A DNA stretch of 64,000 nucleotides from Bispira polyomma. Lineage: Eukaryota. The notes beneath the pieces were generated by a model. The model was not told where the DNA came from. It saw only the letters and a list, made by a program, of their open reading frames with translations, and made no database searches. Positions within the stretch are counted from its first letter, which is position 1. Every line of letters starts with the position of its first letter. This document shows positions 2,106 to 46,110 of this stretch, piece after piece. Location: NCBI GenBank assembly GCA_965649765.1, contig OZ287757.1, forward strand, positions 9,300,001 to 9,364,000, given 5' to 3'. The position numbers were made by a program, and so were the translations under genes.

Positions 2106-3071
2106 AACTAAGCAGAACCAAAAGACTCCCTAGACATACGTAGCTTGTGGTTTGGTTCATCGAAGCATGGTAGCCTGGTCATTATAAAGACATGCTTCAA
2201 CTGTTTCGACCCCAAGATTGTCGACTAGCAGCTGATGATATTTGTTACTATCAGAACCACCAAAAAATATTCAAAAAATATTTACCTTCAGTTCCTTGCG
2301 ATAGGAAATTATTAATACGATAGACTTCTCTGTTAAAAAATATATATATACGTGAAGCCGCTATTTCATGCCGAAAGTTGTCTGTGATGTGTATTGTAGT
2401 GACTTCAGCTATATGTAACCTATTACCTGAAATCTTTAACTTGGGGTTGAAAAGGTCTTTTCACCTTTGAGGACACAGGGATAAAATTTCACTGTATCCT
2501 TCATGTAGAAAATTTATCAAACATTTTGCTGTAACCAATTGACCTCAAGCCGTTACAGGAATGAGCATAGGTCAGAACAAGTACTGATTATGTATAATTT
2601 TCTTATTTTGATCTGTATAAAAAGGTTATTCAGGCCACAATTTTCTTTGATGTTTTGAAATGAAACAAAAATTGAAGAGGCAATCAGAACATAAGAATCA
2701 AACATAGTCGCTTCACTATATATCACCTGTAAGTTCAAAGAAAAGTAACTTCTCTGATCAAATTGGTCCAACTTTAATGTTTGACTGTTATAGCTGGGAC
2801 TGTGGAAAGTTCCAGGGCATTTGCAGTGTAAAATTTTGTTTAAATTCCAATACATATAAAGATTACTGATTGTGCTACATTTTTTATTAATAATAATCAA
2901 TTAACAGTACAGAGTAAAAATAAATCCTACAAAAATATACATCTAACATTTATAATCTAGCTAAAGTCATATTAAATTAGCAGTTTCTATTTAAACTCAA
3001 CAAATTTGAAAGGCTCACCATATTTGGTTATATATACATAAAACCAAGCAAAATTGTTTAAATCTTTCCAG

Positions 3072-6000: not shown

Positions 6001-9000
6001 GTTCTTCCACTATTACCTTTCTACAGGAAAGCATGATTATGCCAATAAGCATTGGCATAATCATGCAAAAAACCTGATTTAACAGTTTTTAGCTATTTAC
6101 CATGTAATAGTGAGATCGCCTGCTTGTGGACGTTATGGTCTTTGTGAAATATTAAAATTGTTGTGTGTGGTATTATCTTTTACGTACGTGCAGATCGATA
6201 AAAAAATGTTCTGCAAAAAATCTTTATTGTCTACTGATGCCGACACATCCTATATTGTGGCACTATTTCTTTTGAGAATAAACAAGCACCTTATATGATG
6301 ATATATGAATAGGGTGCTATACAAAACATAATAATAATGGTCTCCCTGGTTACGTGGTGAATAACAATCCTGGACAAGATGCAAACACACCGTTGTCTAC
6401 TGATAATAACAAAAGCCATATTGTAAGAATATCCCTTGTTAGAGAACAGTCACCATAACAGATGCATACATCATAATAATGAAAACCTTTTTGAGTGACA
6501 TCCTTGGCAAAAAAGTAATTTATCAGGTTGCAGGTATCTGGAGTCACTAATACACACATCACAGAATACTTCAGAAATTTCATAACAGTCTCATGTATAA
6601 TATTTTGAATAAAGAATTATGCAGGACTAACATACATGCCTTTGACAAATACATGCTACTCGACAGAGAGGGTACTTAAAAAGTTATTGTTGCACTATGA
6701 TTTAACAAAAACAAAATGGTTTACCTGTCGGAATTGTTTGCAGTCTACCTTATCGGCTCGGGCTCTCAGTATGTCCCCCACTGCATTTTCAAACTGTTGG
6801 AAATTGCTCCCTCTGCATTCGTCTTGCTTTCTACTAGATTTGACTTGCTTTTCTTTCTACAGAAAAATACATAAAGCTTGATACAACTGATCGACATGGG
6901 GAGGACATAAAGTTGCCCACAATGGTCACAAAGTCATCTACCCATGTTGCTTAAAATATTGTTGTAAAACACATGACTAAATTTTATTGTGTGCTAAACA
7001 CCTTTAATTGATATTTATTTATTTTTATTTAAATGTCGCACTTTGTACCTATGTATTATCTTGTGCGACCAGTTACGGATAATGAGTTTTCTCAAACAAG
7101 AAGCACCAGCCTTGTATACTACTAATTTTCCCCAACATACACAAGTTATATAACAAGATACATGCCCTCAGCCTGAGTCAGCATTAGCCACCATTCTACA
7201 TTAAAGTGGACTAAAAGCTAGAGTTGACACTTAAGTATCTTTTTTCGAACACCTTTTATTGCATATGATGACAGGGTTTAACTATTTTCATTAAAATACA
7301 TTTTGCAGTGAACTGTCGCTTATAGAGAGACAAATACCATTTCGGTGAAATATTAATTAATACAATTATATTGTCAAAATGACATAACAATAAAAAGTCT
7401 ACCAATAAACAACAGTTATAATTGTTCATTTTAAGTACAATATGGTGTGAACGAAATAGGTTAATCAGTAGTTCTATCAAAAAAACTTATATGAACTCAT
7501 TTGTAACTCCAATAAAACAGTATCGAAATCCCTTTCAACATCACCAAACCTATTTAACATTGTAACTTAAATTAGACAGGATTAGGTTGCTTTAAGTTTA
7601 ACTTTACTGCAAACAACCACCCTTCAGCAAGTCTACTGCCAACTTCTCTGCATATATGGTGTGGACAAAATTCGAACCCCTGACATAGAGGTGGGATGTT
7701 AGTGTCTTATCACTACACCAATGAGTAATTCGAGGTAACATTTAAGTTGACATCATTGTAAGCCTTCAGAAATGGAACCGTGGCTTTTAGAGAGACAGAT
7801 ACGATTTGGGTGAAATATTAAATTATAAAATGTTATTGTCAAAACGACATGACAATAAAAAGTCTTTTGAACAATAAAAATATGATCACCACTGATCAAG
7901 GTAACAGGGTGCTATCATATCACCACTCTTGCAGCATGTAGCAGTGAACAGCATTTCTTACTCCATAACCTATATCTGTTGAAATATATAGACACCTCAA
8001 AAATATAATTATATTTTCCTTCAGTTTCTCGCATTAGGAAATTGTTAGTACAGCAAACCTAGTCCGTTCCACACTTCTACCCCACCCTACGACCCCAAAA
8101 GAAAACTATCGCCGGGAAATGAAGGAAATTCAATAACTACCTCATGGGGAAGTATGCTGTAGTAACCATTTCCTATTGTGAGTTTTATTAACCCTTGCGA
8201 CCCCTGTGTTGTTGGCAAGTGGTGGCTTTTTTTACCCCTTTTTTACTCTCCGCAATCAGTCGAGACTGCTTCAATTTTCCTTCAGTTCCTCTTAATAACA
8301 AAATTGTAGTATAGCAGACTCCTTTGTTTAAACAAAATACTTAAGGCTGTTATTGAATTCCCGAGTTAGTCTGTGGTATTATTATTATTATTATGCATTT
8401 TTAACATGCTTTATTGATGCTTGGCATCTTCTAAAGCGCAACAGCAGAATCAGTGATCCAATCGTAAAGTCCATGGGCATAGCAAGGTCATAAGGGTAGG
8501 GGGGTTAACAGATGGTTAATCAGCAAGCAACCAGACTGGGTGTTAACCCACCCCGTAGCATCCGGCGGCAAGGGGCGCAACTCCCTTTTACGTTTCACAT
8601 GGTGAAGGGTGCCGTGGTATGTTTTAGCGACTTCAGCTATCAGTAACCTATTACCAAAAACTTTCTTTTCAGGCTATAGTTTTTTCTTGTGGTCGAAAGG
8701 GCTAAAAGTAATGTTTAAGTATAAATTAATTATCCTTATCTTCCATCAGTTTTCATCACAAAAAAAATCAGGCGAGATACCTGATTGATGAAAAGCATGG
8801 GTTGGTCAACTTGTTCAAGCGGAGCACGTATTTGTGTCACCATCTCACTGTATACTGATGTTATCACCTTCTGTGCAATCTGTGTGAAATAGAAAAAGCT
8901 ACTGAATGAAAACTGGCAACATAGCATTGTAATTTGTGTTAAAACAAAGCATTGTATTTTGTGTTAAAACAATACAACATTATTACATGTCTGTTTTTCC

Positions 9001-12000: not shown

Positions 12001-15000
12001 TGATCTAAAATCCCATCAGTAACCCATGATTCTCTGATGAGATTTGAATTTGGTCTTGCGATTACCAGATCGATTATGTGATTGTGGATGTGGGTTGAAG
12101 TAGAGATAAACTGTGAGAACCCAAAAGTGTCGAGGAGGGTGTTGAAATCTTTTGTCGCAGTATTTTCTATGTCAAGCTTGATGTTGAAATCACCAAGGAT
12201 GATAGCTTCAAATGGGAGAAGGTTAAGGGTCTCAAGGAATTCGGAAAACTCTTGAGTAAAACTAGTTAAAGAAGGGATGGGTGGTCTGTAAAAGGAGGAA
12301 ACTAGGAATAAATGATAACCGTTTGAAATTTTGCATGAAATGTGTTCGAAAGACGAGTAGGACTGGTTTTTTAGAATATCACAGGGTATTTTTCACAAAA
12401 ATGCCAACTCCTCCCCCGCGTTTGTGCAACCTGGGGAACTGATGAAATTTGTAGCCCGGAGGAGTAATATCCGATAAAAAGGATGTCGTATCCCTACTGC
12501 TGAGCCACGTCTCGGAGACGGCAGCAACATCCAGGTCCTGGGCTATGACTAAGTCGATAGCCGCAGGTGCCTTATTCTGCAAGGAAAGGGCATTAAATGC
12601 ACCGATCTTAAGCAAGGATGCTGGGGGACCCGGATTAATGCTGACGTCCCCGCAGAGCGCAGTCAACAGAGGGATCCAGATACTGTTAACCCTGGGGTTT
12701 GGACGGCGGGTAATGTGAATTTGAAAAGCTAAAAAAGAAGTGTTCACCTTATCCAGGGAGGCTAGTAGAGATGGACCAAGTGCAAATTGGTCGAAAAAAG
12801 GTGTATTGGATGGAGAGCAGGCGCTCCATTTATGTAATCTGACACCGGCCAGAATAATACACGGGAGAAGTGTTAAACAGAACTTCCACATCTCAGATTT
12901 GAAGGAGCAGTAGCAAGAAAAAGAACCAAATATAAATCACAGCTAGACAGAATCAAAATGAAAGATGTAGTTTATTCTATGTAAAAACACTTGTAGTATA
13001 AAAATATGTGAACAAAGTCACATAGAATAAAAGGAAATGCGAAAATAGCAGAAGAAAAACGAATGCGTAAAACGGGAAATGTGGGCGATAATAACAGAAA
13101 GTTAAACAGCTAGGTGATAAATGGCAAGAAAAGCCCTATAAGACAGACAAAGTAAATATGATAAAAAGAACTGTAATTAATCAAAATATATAATGTTTTT
13201 CGCCATAACTCGAGGTACCAGTAAGAATTTTACAATTCGCGAAACGGAAATTTTAAAATGCTACTTAACTGGTGCACGCTAAACCACAATATGACTAAGT
13301 CGATATATCGTATTGATGATACACTAAACTCCAGCCTCAACTGTCTTGGGTTCGAAACTTAGTCCTGGCATGTTTGTGGGAAAGTTGACAAAGGACTTGC
13401 TGGAAAGTGTGTGGTTATTAGAGCAGAAAACCTTGACCAACTACCCTGCCTATTATTGTACACAAAACATGTTGAAAACCTTAAGTAAGTCAACATCATA
13501 CTATCATTGTATCACATCACAAATACAGACCATCAGAATATCATGCAATAATGTCAGCCTCTCGCGTTCAGATTCCTCAGAAGGGTCATCCATATAGTCA
13601 TCCAGTGCATTCTTGGCATCCAGCCAAGCATCTGAACAGAACATCTGGTATGCCTCCGATACATTCATGGGTCTGTTCTTGACGCATATATTTTCCAGGC
13701 TGCTCTCGTCGCGCGATACCTTCACTTCCATTTCTTTAGAGAGCCTGAAATGTCACAAAACATAATGACATGGTCAAGTTTTTACTTAAAAACATGTTTG
13801 ACTGAACTTATGCTAGACAAGCAATGCATCCTGTATTTAATATCAAATTCAGCTTTGTGTAACTTTTCACTGCCTTACGTTTTCAAAAGTGTTTGTTTTT
13901 TCATATTGATAATTATCACGGTATTCCCCTATTTCTAGTAATCATTTTCCATCAGTAACTAAGGCCAAGTGGTTAGATGCAATAATAGGCGTGTCATTGG
14001 CAGAGGAACATCAAAACAGGGCAGTTGGTCAAGGTTTTGTGTCTGCTTTACAATCACTGGTCTGTCACTTTGTGTGTTTTATCCTATTTGTTCCTTTATG
14101 TGAGAAGTTTTGTCAGGTACCTACAACAGGTCAGTGGCCTACATTGTTTCAGCAATGTTTTCTTTACTAAATCTGAACCTAAGCTGTTGAAAGCAACGTA
14201 AAACCCAACTAGTTCAAATTCACCAGTAACTGTGAATCCTCCTAACTGAAGACAGGCTACATGGTGGCACAATTTGTCCACCTTTCAAAGAATCTTTAGC
14301 CAATATGTATGTACCTGTAACCCCAGGTTTGTACAAAACAGGTCCTGTGTGTTCATTAGATGTGATAAGCAATGTAAATTAAGTATAAACAATTATTTCA
14401 ACATTTGCGACAAAGTGTAAACACCAGAGTTGAAATAGACAATCTTGACACAAAATCATTAGACAAGTTGTCACACTTCACCTCTCGCATTATTCAAGTT
14501 TGGCGATATTCACTAATCAAGAGCACCAGGCCTCAAAATCAAAGGTTAACCTCTCATTTGATAGGCAGTAGTAGTTTCACAGTTTCAAATGTATAACTCA
14601 TGTCTACTAGTATAACAAGCCTCTTGTTCAATATTATGAGCAGGGCCACTGTCTCGAAGTGGTTAGAAATGTCTGCTTCACTATCACTGGTTTCTCACTG
14701 ATGTGGGTTTCAATCCTGTTCGTTCTTTTATGTGGAAAGTTTGCGAGGAGGTGCCATAGATCGGTGGTTTACAAGTACTGGAGTCTTTCAGCAGTGAATG
14801 TGGTTGTCGTTGTATCACCTACACTGTTGGAAGTGACATAAAAACCCAACTAAACTAGTATTCAATACTTACAGCTCACTTAGCTACAGACCTAGACCTT
14901 TAAAAATTGCCAGGTTTTTGCATTTAAAATGTACCAAAGTTAAAGTTATGGGACAATTTGACACATACAGCAACAATTTCTAAGTTGAAGCGAAATAATC

Positions 15001-18000
15001 ACAATGTTGAGTACACAATACCCTAAGTATCCCTTATTCACTACAGAGTCGAACCTCCCACCCTTTGCCATGTAGAAGATAAACGACAAAACACATAAAA
15101 TTGTGGGTTTTGCTTTTTTTGGTGAATGAGACCACAAAGATGCAGAAGCAATACAATCTCATGACTATAATAATGTAAACACGATTAGGTGTCAGATAAG
15201 TTGTGTGGTCATTGGTGGGTTTACAAAATGCAGACAACAGCCAACAGCTTCGAGACGAAAATTTGGAAAAATAGGCTGTCAAAATTAAGTATATGGACCC
15301 ATATTTTATCTAATGTTTGAAGAAATCACACAAACACTGATTAACATTTAGTTGTAGTTGATCCTTACATTAGAAAAAGTGAAAGGGGCTTGGTGGCCTT
15401 GTGCTTAGAAACATTTGCTTCACAATTACTGGCATCTCACCAATGTGGGTTTGAATCCTGTTTGTTCCTTCATGTGGAAACGCTTGTCAGGTGCCTGTCG
15501 TAAGCTTTTGATTGACGTTTTTCAACTCTGGTTTCTTCAATTCTTAAATTTGTCCATCGCAATGTGACCTAAACTGTTGTAAGTCACGAAAAACCCCACT
15601 AACTAAAACTAAATAGACAAAGTGATGAGCCATTTTGGACAATCAGCGTCATCCCTTCAACCTTTTCTTTGTTGGTTTGTGAGATCTGAAGCACTCGTAG
15701 ATAACAAAGTAACTGAAAGGTTTGTAAAGCACCAAAAAGCAGAATACCATTATTGAGAATGAAAAATTAAACTCATGCCTGACGGGGGAAAGTTGCTGTG
15801 GTGCAGCATATAGACAGGCATGAAAAGGTAGGATTTTTTAGATATGTTACATTTGTGAATATATATGCTATCTGTGCCGTCAGTACATTGGCAAATAAAC
15901 ATGGAAAAATTCCTGATTTAAGGAGAAGTAGTTCTGCCTTTGAAAATACACTGTCAATATAGAAATTATGTCTCTTATAAGATCAATATAGTGTCATGTG
16001 ATCAATAATTTCAAAATTCCTAGTTGACACTTTAGCATGGAATTTCCACAAGTTCTCTTACATATGATGTAAGATTGTGCTAGTAAAGAGATTAAGCGCT
16101 TGTTTACCCGACTGCAATTAACCTCCTTGATATCTTGGTTTAACAGTGTCAAGTCTATGTATGATAGCTGATATTTTAATCATTTTACAATTGGTATACA
16201 CGGATAAAATTACTCTCTGTTTTACATACGTGCCCACTAGGAACCACTTGTTACACCTATAAACTAAAATGAACAGGTTTCATGTGCATGATCTTCCACA
16301 ACAGAGATAATTATGCAAATTGAAAAAAATAAAATAGAATGTAAACTATGATCAGAAAGTTTGTGATATTTGTGTTTTACTTGAAATTTCAGCATTATTC
16401 AGTGTATGTTACTAAGTATGTATAATACTATAACATACTAAGTAATTAAACATGTATGTTTAACTTCTGATCCTGAGGGTCCTTGATTCTATGTCACAGT
16501 TGTCAACGGAGGTTAAACCATTAGCTTCCGGTGATGACACCAATACTGTCATGTTGAACTATCCCTACTTTGACTTTTATATAGTTTGGTTGCTAAGCAC
16601 TTTCAAAAAAATATCACTACGGCCAGATGTAATGGTGGAAGAAACTAGTGATGCAGCACCAACCTATTACAAGTACCTGCCAAACTTTCCCACATGAAGG
16701 AACAAACAGGATTAAGACCACCGTTCCCCCATTCCTTTCTTTTTAAAAACAAGTACTTTAGGATTGGTGTTAAACAAATGATTCAAATTAATAAGGGAAT
16801 CCTAACAAAACTTATTTTAACCTTTCAATAGTTTGGAATGTTAATCGCAATTGCATTTAAACCAACATGTAAATGTTGGGTCATGCTCTGATGTCACCCC
16901 TACACCCCAGCCTGGGATCTTGCACTTTGTCAATCAAATGTTCACACTGCTCTGTCAGGGGCAATGCTAGCATATACCGCACAAACGCGATCAACCTGTA
17001 CCAATTTATATAACTGGGGAAACTTGTGTGGGTTACCTTGTGTACGGATATAGAGCAATCACATTCATTAGTTCATTATGTCTCTTTGGAAGAAATGAAA
17101 TGTAATTCTTACAGCACTAAATGTTTAATATGACAGAAGCACCCTAGTCATATGTCATCTTCAATGGTGGTCATTCTTTGAAAGGGATAGTCCTACAAAA
17201 TAGCTCTGGTCGTCATCATTAGGCAATGGCATGTTCACCATCTTGCCCAGGGATGTTATCTCTGAATAAACCTGGTGGCATGAGTGGGTGTAAAATCTTG
17301 AAATTTCCCATTATCAAATTAACTTCCCCAACTGGGAGTCAAACTGGGGACCTTCCGATTACCACACAAATTCCCCAACTTCTATGACACGGGACACCAA
17401 AAGCCACATCTGTATTAATAAGAACAAGGGGATTAATTCAGCTTACATCATTAAACCAAACAATCATTGAAGCAACATTCATTAACACAATACTTTATTT
17501 TAAGCCATTACATTTTAGTAAACCACATACCACCTACCATGCCACTACTGGGCCAGATAATGAGAAAAAATCCTTGATCAGCACTTCTACCCAGATTCCT
17601 TCCAAAATTGAACAGATTTTATATATGTTTATATATATATAATATACTACAAGTTGGAATAGTAAAAATTACATCCCATTTAAAATTAGACCTAGTTGTA
17701 TCGATATTTTAACCAAAATAGCTAACCGTGAAACTTGGTGTAAGTGAACTTCTTAATAATTGTACATTGGTGACATTTTCTTCCAGCTAAAATGTATACC
17801 AATACAGTAGTAGATTTATATTTTGTTTGGAGGGCACTATGACACTCGGGCAGAGGAAGTGCACACTATCCTGGCTGGTTTTTAAGTTACTATATAAATA
17901 GGCAGAGGAGGGGCAGTGTACACAGCCTTGTACAATACAATAGAAAACTGGTCTTTTAAAAATAGTTTCTGTTGAGATTTGCATTTTCAGATAACACATA

Positions 18001-21000
18001 CAAGGAAAAAGGCATAACAGCCACAAAAACGAAAGTGCAACCATGAAAATAGCCAGCATGTGACTACAGGTGCTTTGTAATATTATACATCAATCCATAT
18101 ACAAGACACTGTCAGTTAGTTTTAAGTACATTGTTTTGCCTATGGTTTTCATCATATGGAAAAATGAGAATTCTACTATTTTTATAGTTATTACAACGGA
18201 AGAAAACATTAGGCTTGCAAATGTGTGGGAGTTACACTTGTATTTAGTCATTGATTTGTTTGACAAGTGGTTACTAAACACAATCATACTTTATTGTTGT
18301 GAAATGTATACAAACAACTTGAACTGAAATCCATATCTAAATTGTTATTACTTAGTGGGTCATCATTTTTTTTTAGTTAGATAACTGGAATTATTGGTCC
18401 CTATTGGCAAGTTTATAGTTAACAATACATCATTTCATTGGGAATTAATTTTACTATCCCCTGTAATTTTTTTTACCCAGAATATAGATAATACAACTCA
18501 ATTACATCAACAAAGACTGAGTGACCAAGAGGATCATAGTTTTGTTGTGTTAACATATATTTGACATAAACCGAGGCATTTCTTTATTACTGTGTCACCA
18601 AAGATGTAGTATAGGAAAAACATGTATTAGCATGTATTTAAGGGGGGAAATTGGAAAAAAGTACATACACTATGGGGGCAAATTGTGAAATATAAGGCTT
18701 TTGGATACTATATTTAGGTTTAGTTTGGAACCAATTTCAAATATACAACAGACACAAAAACACACCTACAAACTGAAACTAAAAAAAAAACTAGCGTAAA
18801 GATATCATTATAGTACACATTTTTTATTCATTTACTCGCATATATTAAAAATTATATTTTACACACTTGTCATTGAAATTTACACACCATTGAATTTATC
18901 CAAAAATAAAATCCCCACTTTCTGATAAAACAGCCCCTCCACCTCTTTTCACTTGTTAAATTATTACTTGAATTATTAGTTAACGATTATTTGAATGAAG
19001 TTGATGAGCTTTCCTGACCGGTTTCAGGTGTTCGCCTTTTACCAGCTACTGCTTTGTAAAATGACAACTTCTGATGGAAAGAATTCATATATACAACTGT
19101 TTAATACATGTACATTGTTTATAATACAAAATAAACTTCATGAAACTTTGTTATATAGCATAAGTATTTAAACAAGGAGGGTTACAGTATCTTTGCTGTT
19201 TGATTACTGTCCACCTGACTCGACCACCAATCTTTGGTCTCATGAAGTGACCCCCTTTGAAAAAAAAATTTATCATCCCTGAGGGTGATTATTAGGATAA
19301 ATACAGCATTTTTTAATTCATATTCTGTAACTTTACATGCTACAAACTAGTTGCCTGTCTTCTGACCACAACATGTTCAAAAGAAAATCTGGATCCTTTA
19401 TAAATGAAGTTCACCATTCAGCTGCTTCCTGACACATTCTCCAAGTTGGTCCAGCTCTGTGCTTCTCGAGATGTGCATGCTGTGGTCCTGACATCTGCGT
19501 TGATCAACTCCATTCAGGAGTGTCAATGCCTGGCAACTCGTTAGCCTCACAACAATCAGAAGGGTACTAAGTTCCGACTCTGCACCCTTTTGACCGATGT
19601 ATAGGTAAACATATGGACTAGGCCTCTTTGCATCTTTGCACCTGCTTGCATACCTCTCCAAAGCTGGCTTAAAGTCATTGTCCATGTCAAAGATCTTTGT
19701 TTTCTCAATCGAATCGTCGTGGCGCAGGAGCTTCAAGGTGGTCAGGGTGAACTCGGACGAATAATACAGGGATGTCTTGCACAGCCGGGTAGCATAGATG
19801 TTTCCACAGTGACACTCCAGTATGATGCCTCGGTGCATGTTCTTTAAGAGGTCATTGACACTAGGTAAGAGGTTATCGGGACAAAGCCCACTCGGCCACT
19901 GGGGCAGCTCCACAAGCTCACGATCCTTGGAGTCTGGGCCAAACAGAGCATCCTTGATAACGTCCGGGATTTCCTCTTCTATATTCCTCGGCACCACGGT
20001 GTATGTGATCCTACACCCCCGGGCTTGGGTCTTGATATGCTGGCTATTGATGATGTTATTTCTGTATATGATTTCCAAATACATTTCGGTGCCCGTTACG
20101 GAGATGCAGTCATGTGACATGACAGACTTGTCAAACGGCAGATGTGGATGACCTTCATCTGGTCTTATTGAATTAAGCTGCAGTGTTTTATAGGCCAATG
20201 GGTTGACAGTACTCGTACCCAACATTGCCATGTGGGGATGGTACCCAGAATCCACCTCTGCACTTTGAGAAACAGTAGAATATGGGCCAGCTGTACTTAT
20301 ATGGCAACTGGAAGACTGAGCAGGTATAAACGATGGACCTGCTGTACTGGCCGGGGTAATAAAGTTGTCAAACTCCATGTCTTCAATGCCACCATCTCTG
20401 TAATCAGCCCGTGCAGACTCCTGCGGCAGCTTGATGTTCCAGTTGTCACTGTTTGCTCCCTGGTAAAAGCACTTTCCCTCATGATCTACTACAGCTGTGA
20501 GCTGATTTTGTGGAGGCTGTCCGAAGGTGGGCCCACCTTTGTGGTGTTCCAATACTACACCAGGGCTGGTGTACTCATTCAGAAATGTTGGTACTGGGGC
20601 ATCTGATCCAAGAGCTGGTTGTACGGACTCCGGGTCGGGGGTTGAGGCAACCGGAGGTACAATTTTCTTTGGTTTTTGCCGCTTTAGAAACCTGTACACC
20701 TTGTAAGGATTTGGGTCACTCTTCCTGGTCATCTCTGGAATTTCCTGTATATCTGGGGCTTTATTCAGGGCGCAGCGTAAGTTGGTCTTCCACTTGGCAT
20801 AGGTGGGCGTGTCGACACCTTCACGGAATTTACCTGTATGGCATGCCCATTCCTTAAAGATCTGACTCTGTTCTGGCACCCAGTCCTGTTTCCCCCCATG
20901 TTTCCAGGGTACTTTAAAGATCTGTGCAGACCTATCCACCCATTGAAGGCCTGGGATGGTACCAGTATTTAACCTGCTTATCAACCAAGGTCTCAGCCTC

Positions 21001-22123
21001 TGTCTACTGTCTGAAGCTTCTTCTTCTGAAATATAAGAGAAACCCCATGTGTTCCAGTGTTCAAATTTAAAGCCTGTAAACTCTTGTCTTTGAACCAAAA
21101 CCTACCACTCAAAATACACTTGAAAAAGTTGATTTGGGACATAGTGGACCTCATACAGTGGCGTCTTTGTGTGCAAGCGGGGTGAAGATTATTAACAACT
21201 GATATTAATTGTAAATGATATAATTTGTGTAACATATTAAAGTAAAAGTAGATTTTGAGAAAGAAACAATGAACAAAATGTCTGCTTGTTTATCAAGCTG
21301 GAATTGTGTAATATATCACACAAATATTATCTTTTCTTTTCGTCAAACTTGATTAATCTTAAATCCTCCAATAACCACATACGACTTAGCCAGAAATAGA
21401 AAATTTTTGATTGTAGTCGAATCAGATTAAGAATAGATATTGAGTGTTCACTCTTAGCTCATGATTTGTTTTAAGAACATTTGCTCAGTTGAGACTTGAC
21501 CTGTGTTGGGATCTCACTAAAAGAAACTTTACTTGGACAAAAATTTGAAAAAAATCCTACTTCTTAACTTTAAACAACAAATTTATATTTTTTTAAGTCA
21601 TAATTAACGTTTTCGATGCGTAATGAAGTATTAAATGAAAAATAGTAAAGTGGTAAAATTTTATTCCGACTATAATCTTCACAGTATTTATAAAAATTTA
21701 AGTAAATTATTAATATGATTAACAGACAACTATTATCAGACATACCTGCATAACTGTGGCCAGTGATTGACATGTTGCTATTGCCCTGTACTTCCCAAGC
21801 CATTTCTGTGATTCTCTGGCTCAAATCGTCTCTAGTAGTTAAAATATATCCTTATATTCTTGTTCTCAGGATACCAAATTAATATTCTTCTTTAAAACTT
21901 TTTTTCGTCTTTCAAGAATCCTATCTGACTCGAAACAACTCTTTTAATGTAAAATGTGTAACTCCTAAAAACCTTCCAGTTATATACATCTACTGGTGAA
22001 AATAACTGTATTACCCCCTCCAACACTGGTGTAGTTTTAACAGTCAACGTATTTGACAGTACAATAGGTGTGAAACCGTGTTATAATTGACCTTCTTGTC
22101 ACTAGAACATATAAATACACTGA

Positions 22124-22156
<33 letters not shown>

Positions 22157-22932
22157 TCTCCACAGTTTTCCAGTTCAATGTCTGTTGTCGGAAAATACAA
22201 CGGGCGATATAGTAAATATTCAAACCAGTCCCATATAAGCTATCTTCCTCAATTAATTTACTTCCTTATAGTACATGTACATAGACCCACTGCTTGTTTT
22301 GTTATTTCAAACTGTGTTCTGAAACTGGTTTTAATATATCTGTCGTCCTTCGATTTTCCCAATACGGGGAAGTTTTGTTCCATCCGAAGATAGAATTCTG
22401 TCAGTTGTTTAATAACGGCACAGATGTATCATTTAGGTTTTCCTGGTATAAAGCGAAGATATGTTTACGCAGAGAATTCGCCGTCAGTATTTTCCCCGAA
22501 AACACTGGGAATTCCCCACTACGCGTATTTGTAGCTATAAATAGTAACACCTAAGCAGAGCCTCGTTTTCGCGGTTTAGGTACTCATACTACTGCGCCAT
22601 GAATATGTAAACAAAGAAGTACTTCGATAACGACACATGACTGAGCCGATCAATATACAAATAAATCTAAACCACAGTCGTCGTTTGAAAACCTTGGGAA
22701 TTTTATACTGAACATTTATTTCATGATATATTGGCATTCTTATTTGTACATATATAATATATGGTTTCATAAACAATTATGTCACACCCCACCCCCCACC
22801 CCCCACCTCGTTTATAATAATATGCTTTTATATGACTAGGGTAATCTAACGAAAAAAATTATACGGATCAATTTCGGTTTCACGTTCGCCGATATATTCT
22901 TCACATTACTAATAGTTTGTGGGAGAATAGAT

Positions 22933-22964
<32 letters not shown>

Positions 22965-25900
22965 CATGACAGTGCTCCCCATTAAGAAGTAATTATTTAT
23001 TGATTTATTGTGTGTATTGTTTGTTTTAATTTGTTTGGATTTTTTTCAATCTCAACATAGTACGGAAGCCTGTACAGGTCATACAAAAAATAAGAGATAT
23101 ATGTTTAAATTACAAAAAGGGCTCATATTGTAATTACCAGATATATCTCATAATCTAATCTAATCTAATCTAGTCATACTTTTATAGCGCTTAATCTTTG
23201 TACAACAAATTCTAAGGCGCAACAAACCCAAAACGTTAATCGCAAATCAAAAATAGTGGGCGGATGGAAGTCGTAACCAGGGAGACTACCGTAGATGGTT
23301 GCGACGGCTAAGGTGGAAAAGCCTGTTCAAAAAGATAGGCCTTCAGCTTACTCCTGAAAGAGGAGAAAGTTTGAGCTAGGCGAACATGATCAGGTAGGCT
23401 GTTCCAAATGAGGGGGCCATCATGAGCTAGGCAGTGATTGAACTGAACTTTGGATTTGTGGATGCGAGGGTCGAAAGTGGGAATGTTAAGGTATAATTTA
23501 TCAGGGTTACTGCGCCTAGTCCTGACTGAGCATGTATATTTGGATAGATGGGGGCTAAAATAAGTGGGTAATCCAGAATTTAGAAATTTATATATTATTG
23601 TTGCTGTTTTGAAAGCAACACGATATTTTATTGGGAGCCAGTGCAGTGACTTCAGTACAGGAGTAATGTGGGAAAATTTAGATGTTTTGGTCACAATACG
23701 TGCCAAGGAGTGTTGGATATTCTAAAGGCGTCTGAGATCACTACGAGATAAGGAACGGAACAGAGAGTTGCAGTAATCAAGCCTGCTGCTGACCAAAGCA
23801 TTGGCAACTGTGATTGCAGTGGATTTTGAAAGATAGCGTCGAATCCGCCTGAAATCACGCAGGTCAACAAAACATGATCTACACACCGATGTGACATAGT
23901 TCGAGAAGGAAAATTCAGAGTCGAACACCACACCCAGGTTTCGTACTTTGTCAGCTGGAAAAAACCTGCTGCCAAGAATGTCAAGTGGAAAACAGCTGGA
24001 CAATTTTTCCCGTTGCGACTTGGAGCCAAACAAAATAAACTCAGTCTTCTCAGGGTTCAGCTTGAGTTTATTTGCTGCCATCCAGTGTTGTACATCAACA
24101 AGGCAGTTCTGTAAGGAAGTGAAAGCTACCTGGGCAGAGTCAGGTGTAAGGTAGATGTACAGTTGGGTATCATCAGCATAGAAGTGAAAGTTTATGTTTT
24201 TGTATGCAGCAATAATCTTGCTGAGTGGAGTGGTGTACATGGAAAACAAAATGGGACCCAGGACGGAACCTTGGGGAACACCAAATTTTAACCATGTTGG
24301 GTCGGATAAGATATTGCCAATTTTGACTGATTGGAATCTATCAGATAAATATGCCGTGAACCACTTAAGCGCCATACCGTTGATACCGAACCAGGACGAT
24401 AGGCACTGTGATCAATAGTATCAAAGGCTGCTGACAGATCCAGCAGTACTAAGGCAGTAGGCATACCTTTGGATAAAGATGTATGAACATCATTTTTGAT
24501 GCAGAGAAGTGCAGTCTCAGTAGAATGACCACTTTTGTACGCTGACTGATACTTATTGGACAGATTGCTGACGTCAACATGTTGTTTGATCTGTAAGGCA
24601 ACCGCGCGTTCTACCAACTTAGAGATACAGCAAAGGCCTGAGGCAGGACGGTAATTTTTCAAGTCAGCCTTTGGAAGAGAAGGTTTTTTTTATTAAAGGA
24701 GTGACAATAGCCTTTTTAAAATAATCTGGAAAGACGCCATTTATCAAAGAGAGGTTGATATGTTTTGTGATTGAGGGCAATAAAATGTCAATACATTCTA
24801 TGACAAGGAATGTGGGCCACGGATCTAGCAAGCAAGATTTTACGGGTGATGCCAGTATAATTTTCCTGACTTCATCAACAGTTACTGTGGAGAAACAGTT
24901 GAAGACGGTTGGTGGAGCTGTTGGTAAAGGGGCATTTAGGGCAGCTAATGTAAAACCGTCACGGATTCTGGTAATTTTATCAGTGAAAAAAGTACTAAAA
25001 ATGTTTGCCAGTGATTTGCTATTGGAATTTTCGGGTAGTATAGTCTGTTTTTTGCGGTGGAGGGTGTTATTTAGTTTTTGCGAAAGTTTCTTCGGGTCAC
25101 CCTCGCTTTGAGATATCATGTTAGCATAGTAGGCACGTTTTGAGTCATTTATAGTGTTGTTGCACCGGGTGATCCATTCGCGTAGTCTAGATCTATTTGT
25201 AGCTGTTTTGTTTCGGCGCCATGTTCGTTCGGCTTGCCTGCGCAGCATCTTCATTTCACGATAATTACTGGTGATCCACTCAGGTGCTGTACTGTGTGTA
25301 TAGGTCAGTGGCATTATCAGCAGGAGACTTGGCGAAGGCCGTATCTGCCAACTCTCGTCTAAGGTCAGACATATTGATTTTTTGAAATTGCCGAAAAGTG
25401 ATTTGTGTGACATCAAAAGATGGTGGGGAGGGAGCATCAATTTCACAGGATATCGAAAAATGATCACTGATGCAACGAATGTTTTTTATGTTTTTGATAC
25501 CATTGAAATCAGTAGGAGTTAGCAAGCAATCTAGTGTATGCCCATGAATATGGGTAGGGAAGTTTATATGTTGGGTAAGATTGCAAGATTCCAGAACTGT
25601 GGAAAACCGATTACTATTTCCAGATGCGGTGTCTATGTGAATATTGAAATCCCCACAGAATACAGTAGGAGAGGGTAACGAGCAAGTAAACCCAACAAAA
25701 GACATGAATTCTTCGAAAAATGTAGTGAGATTTGAGCCAGGAGGCCGATAAACTGTTGCAAAATTTAAACACCGGTTTTTCCAGTGAGCAGAGACAAGGA
25801 TGAGCTCGAAAGATGTAAAACTTGGTGTAGCAACTAATCGACATTCATAGTTTTTCTTAATAAAAAATCCCACCCCCCCCCCACCCTGTTTACCTACACG

Positions 25901-28900
25901 AGGGGTATGGAATAGCTGAAAGTCAGCTGGGGTAAGTTCAGAGAGGAATGATGGAGTATCAGAACTCCTAATGTGTGTTTCTGTGATGCCGAAAATATCT
26001 ATGGAGGATGAGTCGATCAAATCGGCTATGACAGGGCTTTTATTCCGCAACGAGCGGACATTTCCAAATCCGAACTGAATTGGGCCAGGGTTACTCACAA
26101 TATCACCTGCCAGTAGGATAGTAATGAGTTTGAATGTTTTAGCCTTTGGTAGGTAATTGACTGGGCAGAATTTAGATCGAAAATAACAGTGTGTGTGGCG
26201 GGACCAGAAGTGTGGAACAGGATTGCAAGACAAATTAATGTCTTCCAGGTGGTATTGCATTGACAATGTATCAGATAATTTTAAGTCGTTGCGATAACAG
26301 AACGTAAGGAATGACAGGTACAAGATGGCAGCCCTAATGGCAAACATATTGAAAAAAAAAACAAAAAAACAATATATAGTGGTGATGGTCGATAATAGGG
26401 GATAGTTTCCAGTATAACCCCAAATTCAAAAAAAATAAAAAGTGTTGTACAAAGACTAAGCATAAAAATAGAAAAACAGTTTATATACTAACATGTGAGG
26501 ATGATTTTTAAGTAAAACAAGCCAAAACGTGGGTATAAAAAGACTAGATTAATTTAATTTTGACAATTACGAGCCGCCGCCGCCAAACCGGAAGTCTAAT
26601 TTCTCATAGTTACAAGATGTATCTCGTAATTTCAACATAGAGCTATCTCGTAATTTCAAGATAACCTTATGTTTAAATTAAGCGATAGCATTATGTTAAA
26701 ATTACAAGATTACCTTATGTTGAAATTATGAGATGTATCTTGTAATTACAACATATATCTTGTAATTACAGGATTAGCCATTCTTGTAATTTCAACATAA
26801 ATCTCGTAATTACGAGATAGCACTATCTTGTAATTACAAGATAGCATTATGTTGGAATTACAAGATAGTGTTATGTTGAAAATACGAGATAGCACTATCT
26901 TGCAATTACGAGATAATTTTTCTTGTATAACCTGTATAGGCCTCCGTAACATACAGACTTGCTAAGAAAGTAGTTTATGCTTATCCGCCATGCATGGAGT
27001 CATTATGATTCCTATATGTAAATTGGGCAAAGTGTTGACTGTGGAAATATAACTGTCAGCTCAAGTGTCTACTTTTAAAAAGTCATATGCGCTCTTATAA
27101 ACCTTCCTAATTTAACATACAGTAGATATTTGCATTGATATGTGAAGATGTTCCTGTAAATGTACAGGCGTATTAAAGCTTCAATAAGTTTATGTATAAC
27201 ATGACATATAGCAGTAATCCATTTATTCAATTATATGTAACTTTGATAATGAAAGGTAGTACATCTAATTTAGACCGCTTTGTTAATGTCATATGTCAAG
27301 ACTTCAAGAGATACAGTATCTTTGCCACCAATTTATTCAAACAGCTTTTGAATAATTGTTTTAAAAATATGTACAATGAAGAAGACTTATTAGTGAGGTC
27401 CTCAGTGGCCGAGTGGTTAGCAAGTTTGGCATCTAATCACAGGCTGTCACCTGTGTGTGGGTTCGCCTCCCACAAGTGACAAATGCTGTGGGCCTGGCTG
27501 TTGATCGAGGACGTAAAACCCTAAACATTGACTTTAGTTGTTGGGAACATAAAAGATTGAATGTTTATAAGAGATACCAGCTGTACCAATTCTAATGCAA
27601 GGGAAATCAATCATCTAATTATTTATATGTGTACTGTGTAAAGCAGATGATGTTGTTCTTTGTTGTTGTTTTTTTTTTTGTCTTCTTAATATAATGGTGT
27701 TGTATCAGTTTGGTGCCATGAGCACGATATACATGAATACATAAGTAAATTATGCTTGAGACAAAAGGACTTGAGGAAAGTCTAATCTCAACATGGGGTT
27801 TCTGTACTGGTCCTTTTGTATTTGTATTGTACAAGGACATTATGGCTTTTATCTGACCAGAGTCACGTTTACACAATCACTACGAAACCCCCCATTGACA
27901 TATAATATTTATTATACCTCGGCGGCGAATCCAGTGATCCTATTGGTTAAAATGCAATCACGTGATATAACATATTTCCCGATATGGCCCGGCAGTTGGG
28001 GGTCATATCACTGCAGCGGGCCATATCACTTGCAAAGTTTAACAAGCACCATGTGCGGTTATTTGTGTTTTCATTAAAGATTTATAGTTTAATACACAAT
28101 TAAACAACTGTAAATACATTATATTGAATTTACTGTTAAACGTCTTCTTCCACCGTGGTTAAATTGTTTATATACACATCACTGGAGTTAGGGGCGCTAC
28201 TACACCTAGCAGCTTCACGAAAATAGATGTCGGGACTAAAATTTCTGCACCCGGCCAATATGGCTTGAGGGCCGTCAGGCCCAAAAGCCATATTGTGCTG
28301 ACCAAGGGTGCATATATTCTAGTATGGCCCTCACAAACAGCTTATATTCTCTTTATTATACCGAAGCATTTTTGATTTTTAATATAGTTTTAATAAGGAA
28401 TTTTAGTCCCGATGTCTATTTTCCTCTAAATATGGTGCTGTGTGTCAGGATGCTATTTTTCACACTGACATGATATAATAAAAATTTATCAAGATTTATG
28501 ACTAAATGAGGGTGGGAAAAATCATAATATTGTCGTATAGACTTTTTTCACACAGATCATGCATAATTATATTTTCATGTCCAACATTTACAAGAATGTG
28601 TGGCCAACAACAACATTTTTTTTAAATTGACTTTTGTGTTCTTTTTAACGTTTCTCCTAAGTGTTAGTCTTATTTTCTGTTGTTAGTGAGCGTTTCCGGT
28701 ACTAGAAGCGAAAAAAATTTTTCTCAAATAATTGTATAGAAGCATAAAAATTGAAAATTGCCTGTTATACATTGGCTGGTCACCTCACCAAGTTGCCTGC
28801 ATGGAAACGCTCACTTATCCAACACTGTTTTGTGTAATTTGTATGTCATGCAGAACGATTGCATGGCATCTCTGTCCCTATTATTGGGCCTCTCCACGAT

Positions 28901-31039
28901 CAGTCTTGATAGTGGAACAGGGTCGAATCATGATCAAGTGGGAGCTTTACTTTATTAATATTACCAAGCGAGTTGTTATCTGACACAGCCTGATATTGAT
29001 CTTGTTCGGCCCAGCCTTGATGGAAATACATAACACCTTATGGATTGGTTGGAAGCAATTGACCCAATTGAACTGAGGGGTGTCAGTTTTATATTATCTG
29101 GCGATTATAACACACAGCCTGATATCGATACTTTGCTGGAAATAATATGCAAGATTGAATTAGTTGGATTCGTTGAAAGCAATCACCCAGGCCAAACTAA
29201 GGGGTGTCAGTCAGTCACACTGTAGGCTGATGTCTTTTTTTAAAGACAATTCTTGTTTATTCTTAAGTGAAACAATTCTATAACAAAACTGAGTGGGTGT
29301 TTGTTGCATGCTATACCCACATACTATGTATGTGGTCATTTCGAAACTAGATTTCAACAGATAAATATAGAAAGTGATTTATCACAATGTATGTTATTTG
29401 AATGCATGGTGATGTTTGTTATAGCCATTATTTTACTACATTAGTTCATATGACTAGTAATAATTTACTAATGTATTATAATGGTAACGTTATTAACCAT
29501 CAGTTATTATGTGATGGCATTTTAAAAGATTTTATCCTTGCGTCTTTACTTAAACTTGCACATCTACAAGGAGGCATTTATATTTTAAATATATTACCTC
29601 AAACCTAGAATCATATTTCATACAACTTATACTAAAGTCCTTACTTTATGGATGCTCATTGTTACTTTTAGCTTTTGACCTTTACCTTAACTGCATCACA
29701 CAAGTAAGGGGGGGGGGGCACTCGGTGACATAGTGGTTAATACAAATGCCTCCCACCTCTGAGGTCGTGTTTCGAATCTTGTTGGCTACAGCTTTATGTT
29801 GGAAATTTGGCAGTTAGTTGAAAGTTGGCCGATGCCAGATCATTTAGACTGCAGAATATTGACCAACTAGTATGCACTGCTTTCCCCCACCAGTAAAACT
29901 AACCTGTTGTGATACGACTTATATACAATGTGCTGAAAGCAACATTAAACCCCAAATCCATCAATCAATTAAGCGTTCTAGCCAGATACTGTTGTAATAT
30001 ACCTAACAAGTCCTCAATTTATTTTTATTGAAATAGAGTATGAATGAGTACATTGTGTGATGTCCTGTCAAAACCATCGCCTGGCATGGCCAGTTACACA
30101 CGGCAAGGAAATTTCAGAGGTGGTCAGACCAGGTATTAAATACAGTTGATATACGATTACTGCAGGTACCATGTGATATGTATATTGTCTAGAACCACCT
30201 TTCCATACCACCAATGAGAGACTTTAGGTGTGACCAGTAATATCTAAACTAGTGCAAGTTTACAGCCTCACTAAAAAAGTAACTTCTATCTGTGTGGGAA
30301 GAGCTTCCATCCCTTTTTGGTGACATCCTCGTGGAATAAACTTACACAATTGTATTGTAAATGAGTAGGCAATATGGTGTGGTCATACGTTGCCTAAGGA
30401 TGTGATGCCACCAACAAACCTAAGCAGGAGTGTAACCAGGGACCCTCCGATCACCGGACAAACTCCACCCGCCACCCCCCTACTTGGAGTTGAAATGGGG
30501 ACCCTTCTAGTCGACAGACCATCTCCCTAACCACTAGGCCACAGGAAACTCTGTGTATCAATAAAATAAAATAACAGACAACAAGCTATCCTATACATAA
30601 AACAGTTGCTGTTATATGGAGAAAAACTGTAACCCACTAACCTGAGTGACAGGTCTTTGCAATCCGCCTGTGATTTCTGTAGTTTTTGCCCAAGATCCAA
30701 GTTCTCCTGGCGAAGTTCTTCCTTTTCCTTTTCAAGCTTTTCCAAATCCAGTTTACTTTTCTTCTGGCTAGAGCTGTCTTCCACGGAAGAAAGGCTACGT
30801 TTTTTGCCACGCAAATCATCTTCCGAAGCCGATGACAAAGAGGACAAAGCCCCGCCCACTACCACTACTTTCTCTACGTCACGATCACCGTCGCACTTCT
30901 GGCTTGAGGCATCATACCACGTTTCGTCGGCTCCGTCACTGATAACTTGCTGTATCTGTGCCGATTCCCTGCTTATTATTTCGGCAGACCTTTTGATTTT
31001 ATTTTTAATATCCTGAACTGAACGCTGTTGATCATCCAT
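3072..31039 (-). CDS. Mieap/SPATA18-like (mitochondria-eating protein C-terminal domain) coiled-coil protein, paralogue A, ~437 aa; coding exons 31039-30642, 13744-13531, 8879-8781, 6856-6725, 4347-4024, 3218-3072
   Basis: All junctions GT-AG and phase compatible (2,0,0,0,0), 1314-nt uninterrupted frame. Motifs R|LSKEM..LENICVKNRPMNVSEAYQMFCSDAWLDA and ACSIVWKMVLQRPQM..YVHPVLYHGDKVMAKGRI resemble the MIEAP domain family; exon structure mirrors paralogue B. The join of exon 30642 to 13744 is inferred. Confidence 0.75.
8380..8613 (-). mobile_element. Second copy of the L2-tail SINE-like element
   Basis: Near-identical to 9930-10173 in reverse; flanked by gtggtat TSD (8373-8379/8614-8620); same 5' start GGCACCC. 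Confidence 0.8.
9337..13250 (-). mobile_element. Near full-length L2-clade non-LTR retrotransposon (APE + RT), disrupted; in intron 2 of gene A
   Basis: APE motifs (SETWL, GGGVGIF), RT motifs ([37 protein letters not shown]), C-terminal SRLDYCNSL..LHWLP..AYPP*, (AAT)n tail at ~9337-9355; in-frame TAG at 10556-10558, frameshifts, and an insertion at 9846-10173. 5' boundary approximate. Confidence 0.9.
9846..10173 (+). mobile_element. Short non-autonomous retroelement (SINE-like) with L2-derived 3' tail, inserted antisense in the L2; 5' head tandemly duplicated
   Basis: tacat TSD (9841-9845/10174-10178), (ATT)n tail, last ~110 bp homologous to the host L2 3' UTR (9340-9456); second copy at 8380-8613. 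Confidence 0.8.
14645..15615 (+). repeat. Two decayed SINE copies (14645-14855, 15385-15615); relatives at ~29715-29970, 44270-44480 and 51165-51385 (-)
   Basis: Shared tRNA-like head, atgtgg(g)aaa core and ctgttg..gtgac.taaaaccc 3' end. Confidence 0.55.
19398..21803 (-). CDS. IRF: Interferon regulatory factor (IAD1-type, IRF4/8-supergroup-like), ~561 aa; coding exons 21803-21746 and 21025-19398
   Basis: Trp-repeat DBD (RLRPWL..GLQWVD..FKVPWKH..IFKEWA..AKWKTNLRCALNK) and C-terminal IAD1/SMAD-FHA-like domain (GCRI..LLKNMHRGI..IYATRLC..KIFD). The TTG start in the ORF track is intronic: strong acceptor tttctcttatatttcag ends at 21026; the upstream exon MAWEVQGNSNMSITGHSYA-G|gtatg (acceptor at 21832) is phase-1 compatible. 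Confidence 0.95.
22491..22517. promoter_or_regulatory. Composite GAS (STAT) + NF-kB site upstream of IRF gene
   Basis: TTTCCCCGAAA at 22491-22501 (TTCN3GAA, same sequence as the mammalian IRF1 GAS core) followed 5 bp later by palindromic GGGAATTCCC(C) at 22507-22517, ~0.7 kb upstream of the IRF ATG exon in a CpG-richer patch. Confidence 0.65.
22870..22888. promoter_or_regulatory. ISRE-like element upstream of IRF gene
   Basis: AATTTCGGTTTCACGTTCG contains TTTCNNTTTC (GAAACCGAAA on the - strand) plus a partial third half-site. Confidence 0.5.
23061..26948. mobile_element. MITE with ~30-bp TIRs (TACGG..CCGTA) and internal palindromic minisatellite, split by the L2 insertion; IS3EU-like termini
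   Basis: tacggaagcctgtacaggtcatacaa (23061) is the inverted repeat of ttgtataacctgtataggcctccgta (to 26948); near-perfect 6-bp TSD acatag/acatac; repeated atctcgtaattacgagat-type units at 23130-23150 and 26597-26915. Confidence 0.7.
23150..26596 (-). mobile_element. Full-length L2-clade LINE (single ORF: leader, 2A-like motif, APE, RT), frameshifted
   Basis: ORF pieces 26347-25280, 25467-24664, 24662-24288, 24375-23722, 23706-23308 carry ITETH, YRPPG, GDFNIH, LLDLSAAFDTIDH, GVPQGSVLGP, YADDTQ, LHWLP, AFPP*; (GATTA)n tail at ~23150-23172. Confidence 0.92.
27398..27535 (+). mobile_element. Older tRNA-derived SINE (related copy at 47405-47550, - strand)
   Basis: A box TGGCCGAGTGG, B-box-like GGTTCGCCTCC, 3' gctgttga..ggacgtaaaacccta. 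Confidence 0.65.
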
Positions 31040-31273: not shown

Positions 31274-31292
31274 GAAATCGAAAGTGAAAGTA
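31274..31292. promoter_or_regulatory. ISRE/IRF-E upstream of Mieap-like gene A
   Basis: GAAATCGAAAGTGAAAGTA = three GAAA half-sites at 6-bp spacing, ~235 bp upstream of the ATG at 31039. Confidence 0.65.
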
Positions 31293-46092: not shown

Positions 46093-46110
46093 AAATCGAA
46101 AGTGAAAGTA
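46093..46110. promoter_or_regulatory. ISRE/IRF-E upstream of Mieap-like gene B
   Basis: AAATCGAAAGTGAAAGTA, identical over 18 bp to 31275-31292; ~1.3 kb upstream of the ATG-containing exon (acceptor at 44785), where a non-coding first exon is expected. Confidence 0.6.

What the first reader, a model, noticed from the sequence alone, without database searches (positions are those of the whole stretch)
13745..30641. IRF gene nested on the SAME strand inside a 16.9-kb intron of Mieap-like gene A
Seen: exon 31039-30642 ends ..DLSL-AG|gt (phase 2) and exon 13744 begins ag|G-LSKEM; paralogue B has the same junction (..DLTM-AG|gt..ag|A-LSHEM) with only a 360-bp intron. So A's homologous intron is ~47-fold larger and contains the whole IRF gene and its promoter. 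Established: most nested genes are antisense to the host. Inference: host transcripts must skip the IRF exons and poly(A) signals (AATAAA on - near 18825, 18575, 17495), allowing transcriptional interference or feedback between IRF and its putative target.
Basis: partly seen in the sequence, partly recalled or inferred. Interest (0 to 1): 0.85.

Follow-up and report, generated by a model that had tools for sequence, protein, structure and literature searches.

The report
IRF retrogene inside Mieap-like gene intron
An immune transcription-factor gene, probably an old RNA-derived copy, sits in the same direction inside the first intron of a gene it may itself switch on; the layout is real and shared with a second species, but same-strand nesting is a known arrangement and no RNA yet shows how the two genes affect each other.

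Summary
Observation confirmed. A two-exon, 561-aa IRF4/8-type gene lies sense within the 16,897-nt phase-2 first intron of Mieap-like gene A. A second species, with IRF synonymous sites saturated, has the same exon order, phases and a 14.2-kb intron; DNA contigs tile the downstream half. Misassembly is excluded and no alternative first exon was found. The IRF is most likely a retrogene: its sister paralogue on contig C4 has at least 8 introns that it lacks, and its one intron looks newly gained. It has its own conserved CpG-rich promoter (ISRE, CTATTTATAG box, kB site). The host promoter carries a conserved tandem ISRE that several Mieap-like paralogues share. Cross-splicing between host and IRF coding exons is out of frame in both species. 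The cited AATAAA signals are uninformative (21 in the intron, none conserved). No RNA was available, so splicing, interference and feedback are inferred. Same-strand nesting of intron-poor genes is common (about 29% of Drosophila nestings); mouse H13/Mcts2 is the working model. What is unusual is a transcription factor inside its putative target. First readers noted two other same-strand nestings in this genome (unchecked).

The parts
31274..31291 (-). Tandem ISRE/IRF-E 235 nt upstream of gene A ATG (reads GAAATCGAAAGTGAAAGT on +)
   Evidence: core kept 147 nt upstream of the orthologous ATG in L042; same 18-mer upstream of B near 46092-46109
30642..31039 (-). Gene A exon 1 (coding part): basic KRSLS motif plus coiled coil, phase-2 donor
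   Evidence: orthologue L042 2921-3240 has the same donor phase, 33% aa identity, rough dN/dS 0.2-0.3
13745..30641 (-). Gene A intron 1, 16,897 nt, phase 2, hosting the IRF gene
   Evidence: 14,160 nt in L042
23151..26430 (-). Degraded LINE (endonuclease plus RT remnants, L2/CR1-like by my own knowledge), sense to the host, just upstream of the IRF promoter; not found at this place in L042
22365..22885 (-). IRF promoter region: ISRE at 22881, CTATTTATAGCTAC box at 22544, kB site at 22517, GAS-like site at 22500 (window only), conserved block near 22395-22365; CpG o/e about 1.0
   Evidence: ISRE, box and kB kept in order in L042 (7067, 7295, 7322); CpG o/e 1.05 there against 0.34 for the locus
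21746..21803 (-). IRF coding exon 1 (19 codons, phase-1 donor)
   Evidence: L042 7850-7901; N-terminus colinear with the C4 paralogue's first coding exon
21026..21745 (-). Single IRF coding-region intron, 720 nt, phase 1, at a position the parent lacks (probable gain)
   Evidence: 2013 nt in L042
19398..21025 (-). IRF exon 2: whole DNA-binding domain, linker and IAD in one 1628-nt exon
   Evidence: pN 0.06 against pS about 0.8 relative to L042 in both domains
13531..13744 (-). Gene A exon 2, the family-defining exon, strong phase-2 acceptor
   Evidence: 83% aa identity to L042 17401-17614
8781..8879 (-). Gene A exon 3
   Evidence: L042 18658-18756
6725..6856 (-). Gene A exon 4
   Evidence: L042 19851-19982
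4024..4347 (-). Gene A exon 5, MIEAP domain C-terminal part
   Evidence: PF16026 30.5 bits, cut-off 27; L042 from about 21485
3072..3218 (-). Tentative gene A last exon (48 charged residues then stop)
   Evidence: outside L042, not checked in the second species
41674..42033 (-). Paralogue B homologous intron, 360 nt

Best explanation
An mRNA of the intron-rich IRF4/8-type gene on contig C4 was retroposed, before the split of the two species seen here, into the phase-2 first intron of Mieap-like gene A in sense orientation. It gained a new phase-1 intron near its start and its own promoter inside the host intron, and it is kept by purifying selection. Shown from DNA: layout, conservation, parent, intron loss, selection, promoter motifs, out-of-frame cross-splices. 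Inferred: polymerases from the host promoter must splice A1 to A2 over two competing IRF exons and read through the IRF poly(A) site; those that fail make dead-end products, since A1 joined to IRF e2 stops within 7 codons (window) or at once (L042). IRF exon 2 thus acts as a competing last exon that lowers full-length host output, more so when the IRF promoter fires, as at H13/Mcts2. Because both promoters carry ISREs, immune signals probably induce both genes. Confidence is about 0.93 for the layout, 0.8 for the retrogene origin, 0.55 for co-induction and 0.3 for a functionally selected damping loop.
For: Junction homology in B, in 15 paralogues and in a spliced family transcript from another organism that reads DLTNR-LSKE (P0092). 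Same architecture in L042. DNA tiling. No conserved coding sequence or family-like first exon between the IRF stop and A2. Parent on C4:65.114-65.145 Mb with at least 8 introns absent from the nested copy, 62% aa identity over 362 aligned positions, sister in a quick tree with SH-aLRT 95. None of the other six IRF loci is on a contig that holds one of the 54 Mieap-like exons. Conserved promoter motifs and CpG peak. Tandem ISRE: 6 of 39 genome-wide copies lie within 20 kb upstream of Mieap-like exons, 0.04 expected. Oyster IRF8 activates ISRE reporters (PMC5557890). Sense-sense interference causes intronic polyadenylation at H13/Mcts2 (PMC13309782).
Against: No RNA for this organism: the A1-A2 splice, start sites and 3' ends are unobserved. 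No poly(A) tail, target-site duplication or UTR homology to the parent remains, so retroposition is inferred from intron absence alone. Four of seven IRF loci here are intron-poor, so intron loss in situ also happens in this lineage. ISRE copies near paralogues are related by duplication and are not independent. A1 is poorly conserved (33%). In Drosophila, nested pairs usually diverge in expression (PMC5174743), which argues against co-induction. The tree is the quick version.
Confidence: 0.75

Rival explanations
1. Neutral cohabitation: the nesting is real and old, but the two genes are expressed in different cells or at different times and do not regulate each other. The ISREs are inherited family traits and the position is a frozen accident. 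This rival concerns only the regulatory half of the best explanation.
For: The host ISRE is shared by paralogues that hold no IRF, so it predates the insertion. Surviving nested pairs usually show divergent expression (PMC5174743). A nested gene is hard to move once inserted, so conservation does not prove function.
Against: Both promoters keep ISREs in both species despite saturated synonymous sites, which points to shared inducibility.
Confidence: 0.45
2. DNA-level duplication or relocation of the IRF gene followed by reverse-transcriptase-mediated loss of all parental introns, rather than one retroposition.
For: Other IRF loci on C1 show partial intron loss. The C4 parent has a CTATTTATAG box next to an ISRE 14 kb upstream of its first coding exon, the same 10-mer as in the nested promoter.
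Against: All 8 mapped parental introns are gone, including the 5'-most one that RT-mediated loss tends to spare (my own knowledge). No promoter homology beyond the 10-mer. The 10-mer occurs 8 times in 239 kb of fetched loci.
Confidence: 0.15
4. Misassembly, or A2 spliced from a different first exon downstream of the IRF, so that the IRF is between genes and not nested.
For: No transcript was seen. Reads were laid only on 13450-19440. A1 has no detectable paralogue by sequence.
Against: An independent assembly of another species has the same order and phases. No candidate exon is conserved between the IRF stop and A2. A1 ends in the family-typical coiled coil plus DLxxR phase-2 donor and would otherwise be an orphan exon in both species.
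Confidence: 0.05

Closest known systems
Mouse H13/Mcts2 (PMC13309782, PMC3467052)
   Same: Retrogene with its own CpG-rich promoter inside a host intron, both transcribed in the sense direction; transcription of the nested gene causes intronic polyadenylation of the host.
   Different: Mcts2 is imprinted and controlled by methylation and is not known as a regulator of H13. Here the nested gene is a transcription factor with a motif for itself in both promoters, it has a coding intron, and interference is unshown.
Same-strand nested genes of Drosophila and human (PMC5174743, PMC4394429)
   Same: About 27-29% of Drosophila and about a third of human nestings are same-strand; intronless internal genes are enriched among them (71.5% in D. 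melanogaster), and nesting typically arises by insertion of short young duplicates into long introns.
   Different: Most such pairs are functionally unrelated and diverge in expression; this pair shares ISRE motifs.
Multi-exonic retrogenes and intron gain in retrogenes (PMC4772013; RNF113B and DCAF12L2, PMC3002245)
   Same: Old retrogenes usually gain exons or introns (over 80% of ancient ones are multiexonic) and mostly recruit new promoters.
   Different: Here the new intron appears to split parent-derived coding sequence near codon 18 without loss of codons, judged from a short 25-residue alignment, so insertion fits better than intronization.
Oyster CgIRF8 and other molluscan IRF8-like proteins (PMC5557890)
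   Same: DBD plus IAD architecture; 53-65% identity in the DBD.
   Different: This lineage's IRFs fall outside the molluscan IRF8-like clade in the quick tree. The nested copy is a lineage-specific duplicate.
Expanded Mieap-domain families of bivalves (OG24, PMC8382680)
   Same: Large PF16026 family (at least 54 copies here, about 53 per bivalve there), coiled-coil N-terminus.
   Different: This subfamily matches unnamed proteins and amphioxus coiled-coil proteins; no mitophagy role is shown, and I found no paper linking the family to ISREs.

Membership tests
Nested gene pair (intronic, same strand) | Internal gene lies wholly between two consecutive host exons | tested here: met
   Promoter motifs and both coding exons lie between A1 and A2 in two species; the 3' end is unmapped but 5.6 kb remain before A2
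Nested gene pair (intronic, same strand) | Flanking host exons are joined in mRNA | not testable with these tools
   No RNA run; supported only by junction homology and an intact frame
Nested gene pair (intronic, same strand) | Internal gene is an independent transcription unit | tested here: inconclusive
   Conserved motifs, CpG peak and own ATG; no start-site data
Retrogene | Intron-containing parent elsewhere whose introns are absent from the copy | tested here: met
   C4:65.114-65.145 Mb, at least 8 introns missing, sister in tree
Retrogene | Poly(A) remnant, target-site duplication or UTR homology to the parent | tested here: inconclusive
   No non-coding homology found; such marks would not survive this divergence
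Retrogene | Intact ORF under purifying selection | tested here: met
   561 and 559 aa ORFs; pN 0.06 against pS about 0.8 in both domains
IRF family, IAD-containing (IRF4/8-like) | Tryptophan-pentad DBD (PF00605) plus C-terminal IAD (PF10401) | tested here: met
   131 and 61.6 bits, cut-offs 27; best single-protein PDB matches are IRF4 DBDs
IRF family, IAD-containing (IRF4/8-like) | Binds ISRE and regulates transcription | not testable with these tools
   Shown for oyster CgIRF8 (PMC5557890), not for this protein
Mieap-domain proteins (PF16026) | MIEAP domain above the curated cut-off | tested here: met
   Exon 5 alone 30.5 bits against 27
Mieap-domain proteins (PF16026) | Orthology to SPATA18/Mieap and mitochondrial quality-control function | not tested
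   One of at least 54 lineage paralogues
H13/Mcts2-type interference locus | Nested transcription causes host intronic polyadenylation in cis | not testable with these tools
   Needs 3'-end sequencing and promoter silencing

The most novel reading that the evidence does not exclude
A transcription factor retroposed into one of its own target genes and forms a conserved one-locus incoherent feed-forward loop: IRF protein activates both ISRE promoters in trans while IRF transcription truncates the host in cis, and the phase of the newly gained intron keeps every cross-splice out of frame.
Probability: 0.2. Interest if true: 0.7.

Novelty: new member of a known kind. Interest (0 to 1): 0.4.

Why it matters
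As a layout it is ordinary: same-strand nested retrogenes are well described. It is worth keeping for three reasons. It is an old, two-species example in an unstudied invertebrate lineage where the nested gene is an immune transcription factor and the host looks like its target, which makes cis interference directly testable with one induction experiment. It shows a probable coding-region intron gain in a retrogene. And it points to the expanded Mieap-like family as candidate IRF-induced immune genes, a link I did not find in the papers searched.

Tried and rejected
RNA evidence: the three runs that hold the locus are DNA contigs. Spliced models were joined only inside local scripts; searches went exon by exon, so no search with the joined gene A protein was made. 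The A2 exon search found no spliced orthologue of A, only family members; P0050 and P0051 lay on short contigs without DNA; P0092 found no relatives; the C1 IRF found none. Identifying the organisms: accession numbers are in no paper, and the tree does not place the lineage in a named group. Rejected: AATAAA sites as evidence (background level, not conserved); the GAS site as a conserved feature (absent in L042); an in-frame A1-IRF chimera (weak acceptors); promoter homology to the parent (not above shuffles); an alternative first exon. A resemblance between the IRF promoter box plus kB site and an abundant repeat is limited to the motifs and was left as speculation.

Full report
Setting. The window is G000:C10:9,300,001-9,364,000 of a 1.035-Gb animal genome. 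The nearest named relatives of its IRF are molluscan IRF8-like proteins, but in a quick tree this lineage's IRFs fall outside the molluscan clade, so the phylum is unresolved. No RNA run holds the locus.

Observation. On the minus strand, exon A1 (31039-30642) ends in a coiled coil and DLSL-AG|gt, and exon A2 starts ag|G-LSKEM at 13744, giving a phase-2 intron of 16,897 nt. Paralogue B has the same junction with 360 nt. A1 to A5 join in one open frame, with a tentative last exon at 3218-3072; exon 5 passes the PF16026 cut-off. The A2 exon has 54 matches in the genome. Of 24 paralogues I could anchor, 15 have a candidate coiled-coil exon ending in a phase-2 Arg donor 273-1328 nt upstream, and 8 have none within 1.5 kb. 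A spliced family transcript from another organism reads DLTNR-LSKE across this junction. A2 therefore needs an upstream exon of the A1 type. The IRF has coding exons 21803-21746 and 21025-19398, encodes 561 aa with DBD and IAD, and is on the same strand inside the intron.

Refutation tests. Misassembly: the top IRF homologue (P0001, 69%) lies on a 2.36-Mb contig of another assembly (L042). There the order is A1 orthologue 2921-3240 with the same phase-2 donor, IRF e1 7850-7901, IRF e2 9915-11542, A2 17401-17614, then A3, A4 and A5, with a 14,160-nt intron. IRF synonymous sites are saturated between the species (pS about 0.8) and the introns do not align, so this is an independent and distant witness. 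DNA contigs from three runs (two samples, one study, possibly the source sample) tile 13450-19440 and one extends about 2.7 kb further. Alternative first exon: between the IRF stop and A2, no open frame of 25 codons with a good phase-2 donor resembles a family exon, and translated comparison of the two species finds nothing there. Neither refuting condition is met. The splice itself is unobserved.

Origin of the nested gene. The closest paralogue lies on C4:65,114,416-65,144,594. It is 62% identical over 362 aligned residues and is sister to the two nested copies (SH-aLRT 95, quick tree). It has at least 8 introns at positions where the nested gene is continuous. The parent's first 25 codons lie in one exon and are colinear with the nested N-terminus, which is split by a phase-1 intron after codon 17-19, so that intron is probably a gain; the alignment is short, so this is moderate evidence. 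No other IRF locus shares a contig with a Mieap-like exon, which favours insertion of the IRF into A after A separated from its paralogues. Retroposition is the simplest reading. It rests on intron absence alone, and three IRF loci on C1 are also intron-poor. Both IRF domains show pN about 0.06; A2-A4 give dN/dS about 0.22 and A1 roughly 0.2-0.3. At least 4.0 kb of the intron is repeats, including a sense LINE remnant upstream of the IRF promoter, so the IRF explains only part of the size.

Regulatory anatomy. Upstream of IRF e1, an ISRE, a 14-nt CTATTTATAGCTAC box and a kB site are kept in the same order in both species (window 22881, 22544, 22517; L042 7067, 7295, 7322), on a CpG peak (o/e about 1.0 against 0.48 and 0.34). 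The GAS-like site at 22500 is absent from L042. The start site is unknown; 7 and 12 upstream ATGs between the box and the start codon suggest a nearer start or a 5' UTR intron. Upstream of A1 is a tandem ISRE (31274-31291) whose core is kept in L042 and whose 18-mer recurs upstream of B. The 18-nt tandem pattern occurs 39 times in the genome (reversed control 11), and 6 lie within 20 kb upstream of Mieap-like exons where 0.04 are expected. These copies share descent, so this shows an inherited family trait, not six independent events. Oyster IRF8 activates ISRE reporters (PMC5557890), which makes the host a plausible IRF target; binding is untested here.

How it most likely works. Host transcripts must join A1 to A2 (acceptor score 7.5, above every AG within the intron) past IRF e2 (4.6) and the IRF poly(A) site. 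Because the host intron is phase 2 and the IRF intron phase 1, both cross-splices are out of frame in both species: A1 to IRF e2 stops within 7 codons in the window and at once in L042, and IRF e1 to A2 also stops early. Mis-splicing therefore costs host output but makes no fusion protein. In-frame acceptors for an A1-IRF e1 chimera exist but score -6.7 and -2.4, below all 39 training acceptors. By analogy with H13/Mcts2, where sense-sense transcription drives host intronic polyadenylation (PMC13309782), firing of the IRF promoter may truncate host transcripts. With ISREs in both promoters this could form an activate-in-trans, damp-in-cis loop. That step is inference.

Comparison with what is known. 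In Drosophila 71-73% of nested genes are opposite-strand, and intronless genes are enriched among the same-strand remainder (PMC5174743); in human about two-thirds are opposite (PMC4394429). Old retrogenes commonly gain exons, introns and new promoters (PMC4772013; PMC3002245). Mieap-domain families are also expanded in bivalves (PMC8382680). I found no report of a nested or retroposed IRF, within a library that lacks most subscription journals. The locus is a new member of a known kind, with one uncommon twist: a regulator inside its putative target.

Limits. Spliced models were joined only in local scripts and searched exon by exon. Only one other species was available.

Verdict. Observation confirmed, interpretation partly supported, interest 0.4; the feed-forward loop has probability about 0.2 and would deserve 0.7.

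Noticed in passing
G000 genome-wide; copies in L031:1836 and L049: A 25-nt motif (CTATTTATAG followed by a kB-like palindrome, preceded by a short hairpin) accounts for most of 4,673 pattern hits, often as same-strand pairs 5.8-6.0 kb apart: probably the terminal repeats of one abundant mobile element. On the other strand it reads as a kB-like site before a TATA box. The nested IRF promoter has the same two motifs with a longer spacer; a shared origin is speculation.
   Followed up: partly
G000:C1:21.60-21.61 Mb and C1:23.69 Mb (L049-L051): Three more intron-poor, fast-evolving IRF genes, two of them head to head; the genome holds 7 IRF loci, of which 4 are intron-poor.
   Followed up: partly
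G000:C10 9.3-9.7, 20.7, 29.7, 36.2-36.8, 38.9-39.3 Mb; C3; C12: At least 54 Mieap-like paralogues in tandem clusters; 6 of the genome's 39 perfect tandem ISREs lie upstream of them, suggesting an IRF-induced gene family.
   Followed up: partly
window 52001-53247 (+): Ser/Thr kinase gene (PF00069, 115 bits) with an apparent frameshift near 52200: pseudogene or assembly error.
   Followed up: no
window 19440-19480 (-): The C-terminal SMHIS motif of the IRF is identical in L042 and kept in the C4 parent; it resembles a pLxIS-type phosphorylation motif by my own knowledge.
   Followed up: partly
G000:C4:65,100,267 (L044:2266): CTATTTATAG box directly joined to an ISRE 14 kb upstream of the parent IRF's first coding exon; possibly its promoter. 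The parent's exons are preceded by tandem partial copies of their own acceptors and exon starts.
   Followed up: partly
window 32970-33892 (+): Fragmented transposase-like frames (Harbinger/PIF-like by my own reading) between genes A and B.
   Followed up: no
window 1836-2102 (+): An 89-codon open frame that looks like an exon of a gene converging on the 3' end of gene A.
   Followed up: no
window 16552-16570 (-) and L042 17187-17205: A 19-nt exact match between the two species in the intron downstream of the IRF; conserved element or shared repeat, unresolved.
   Followed up: no
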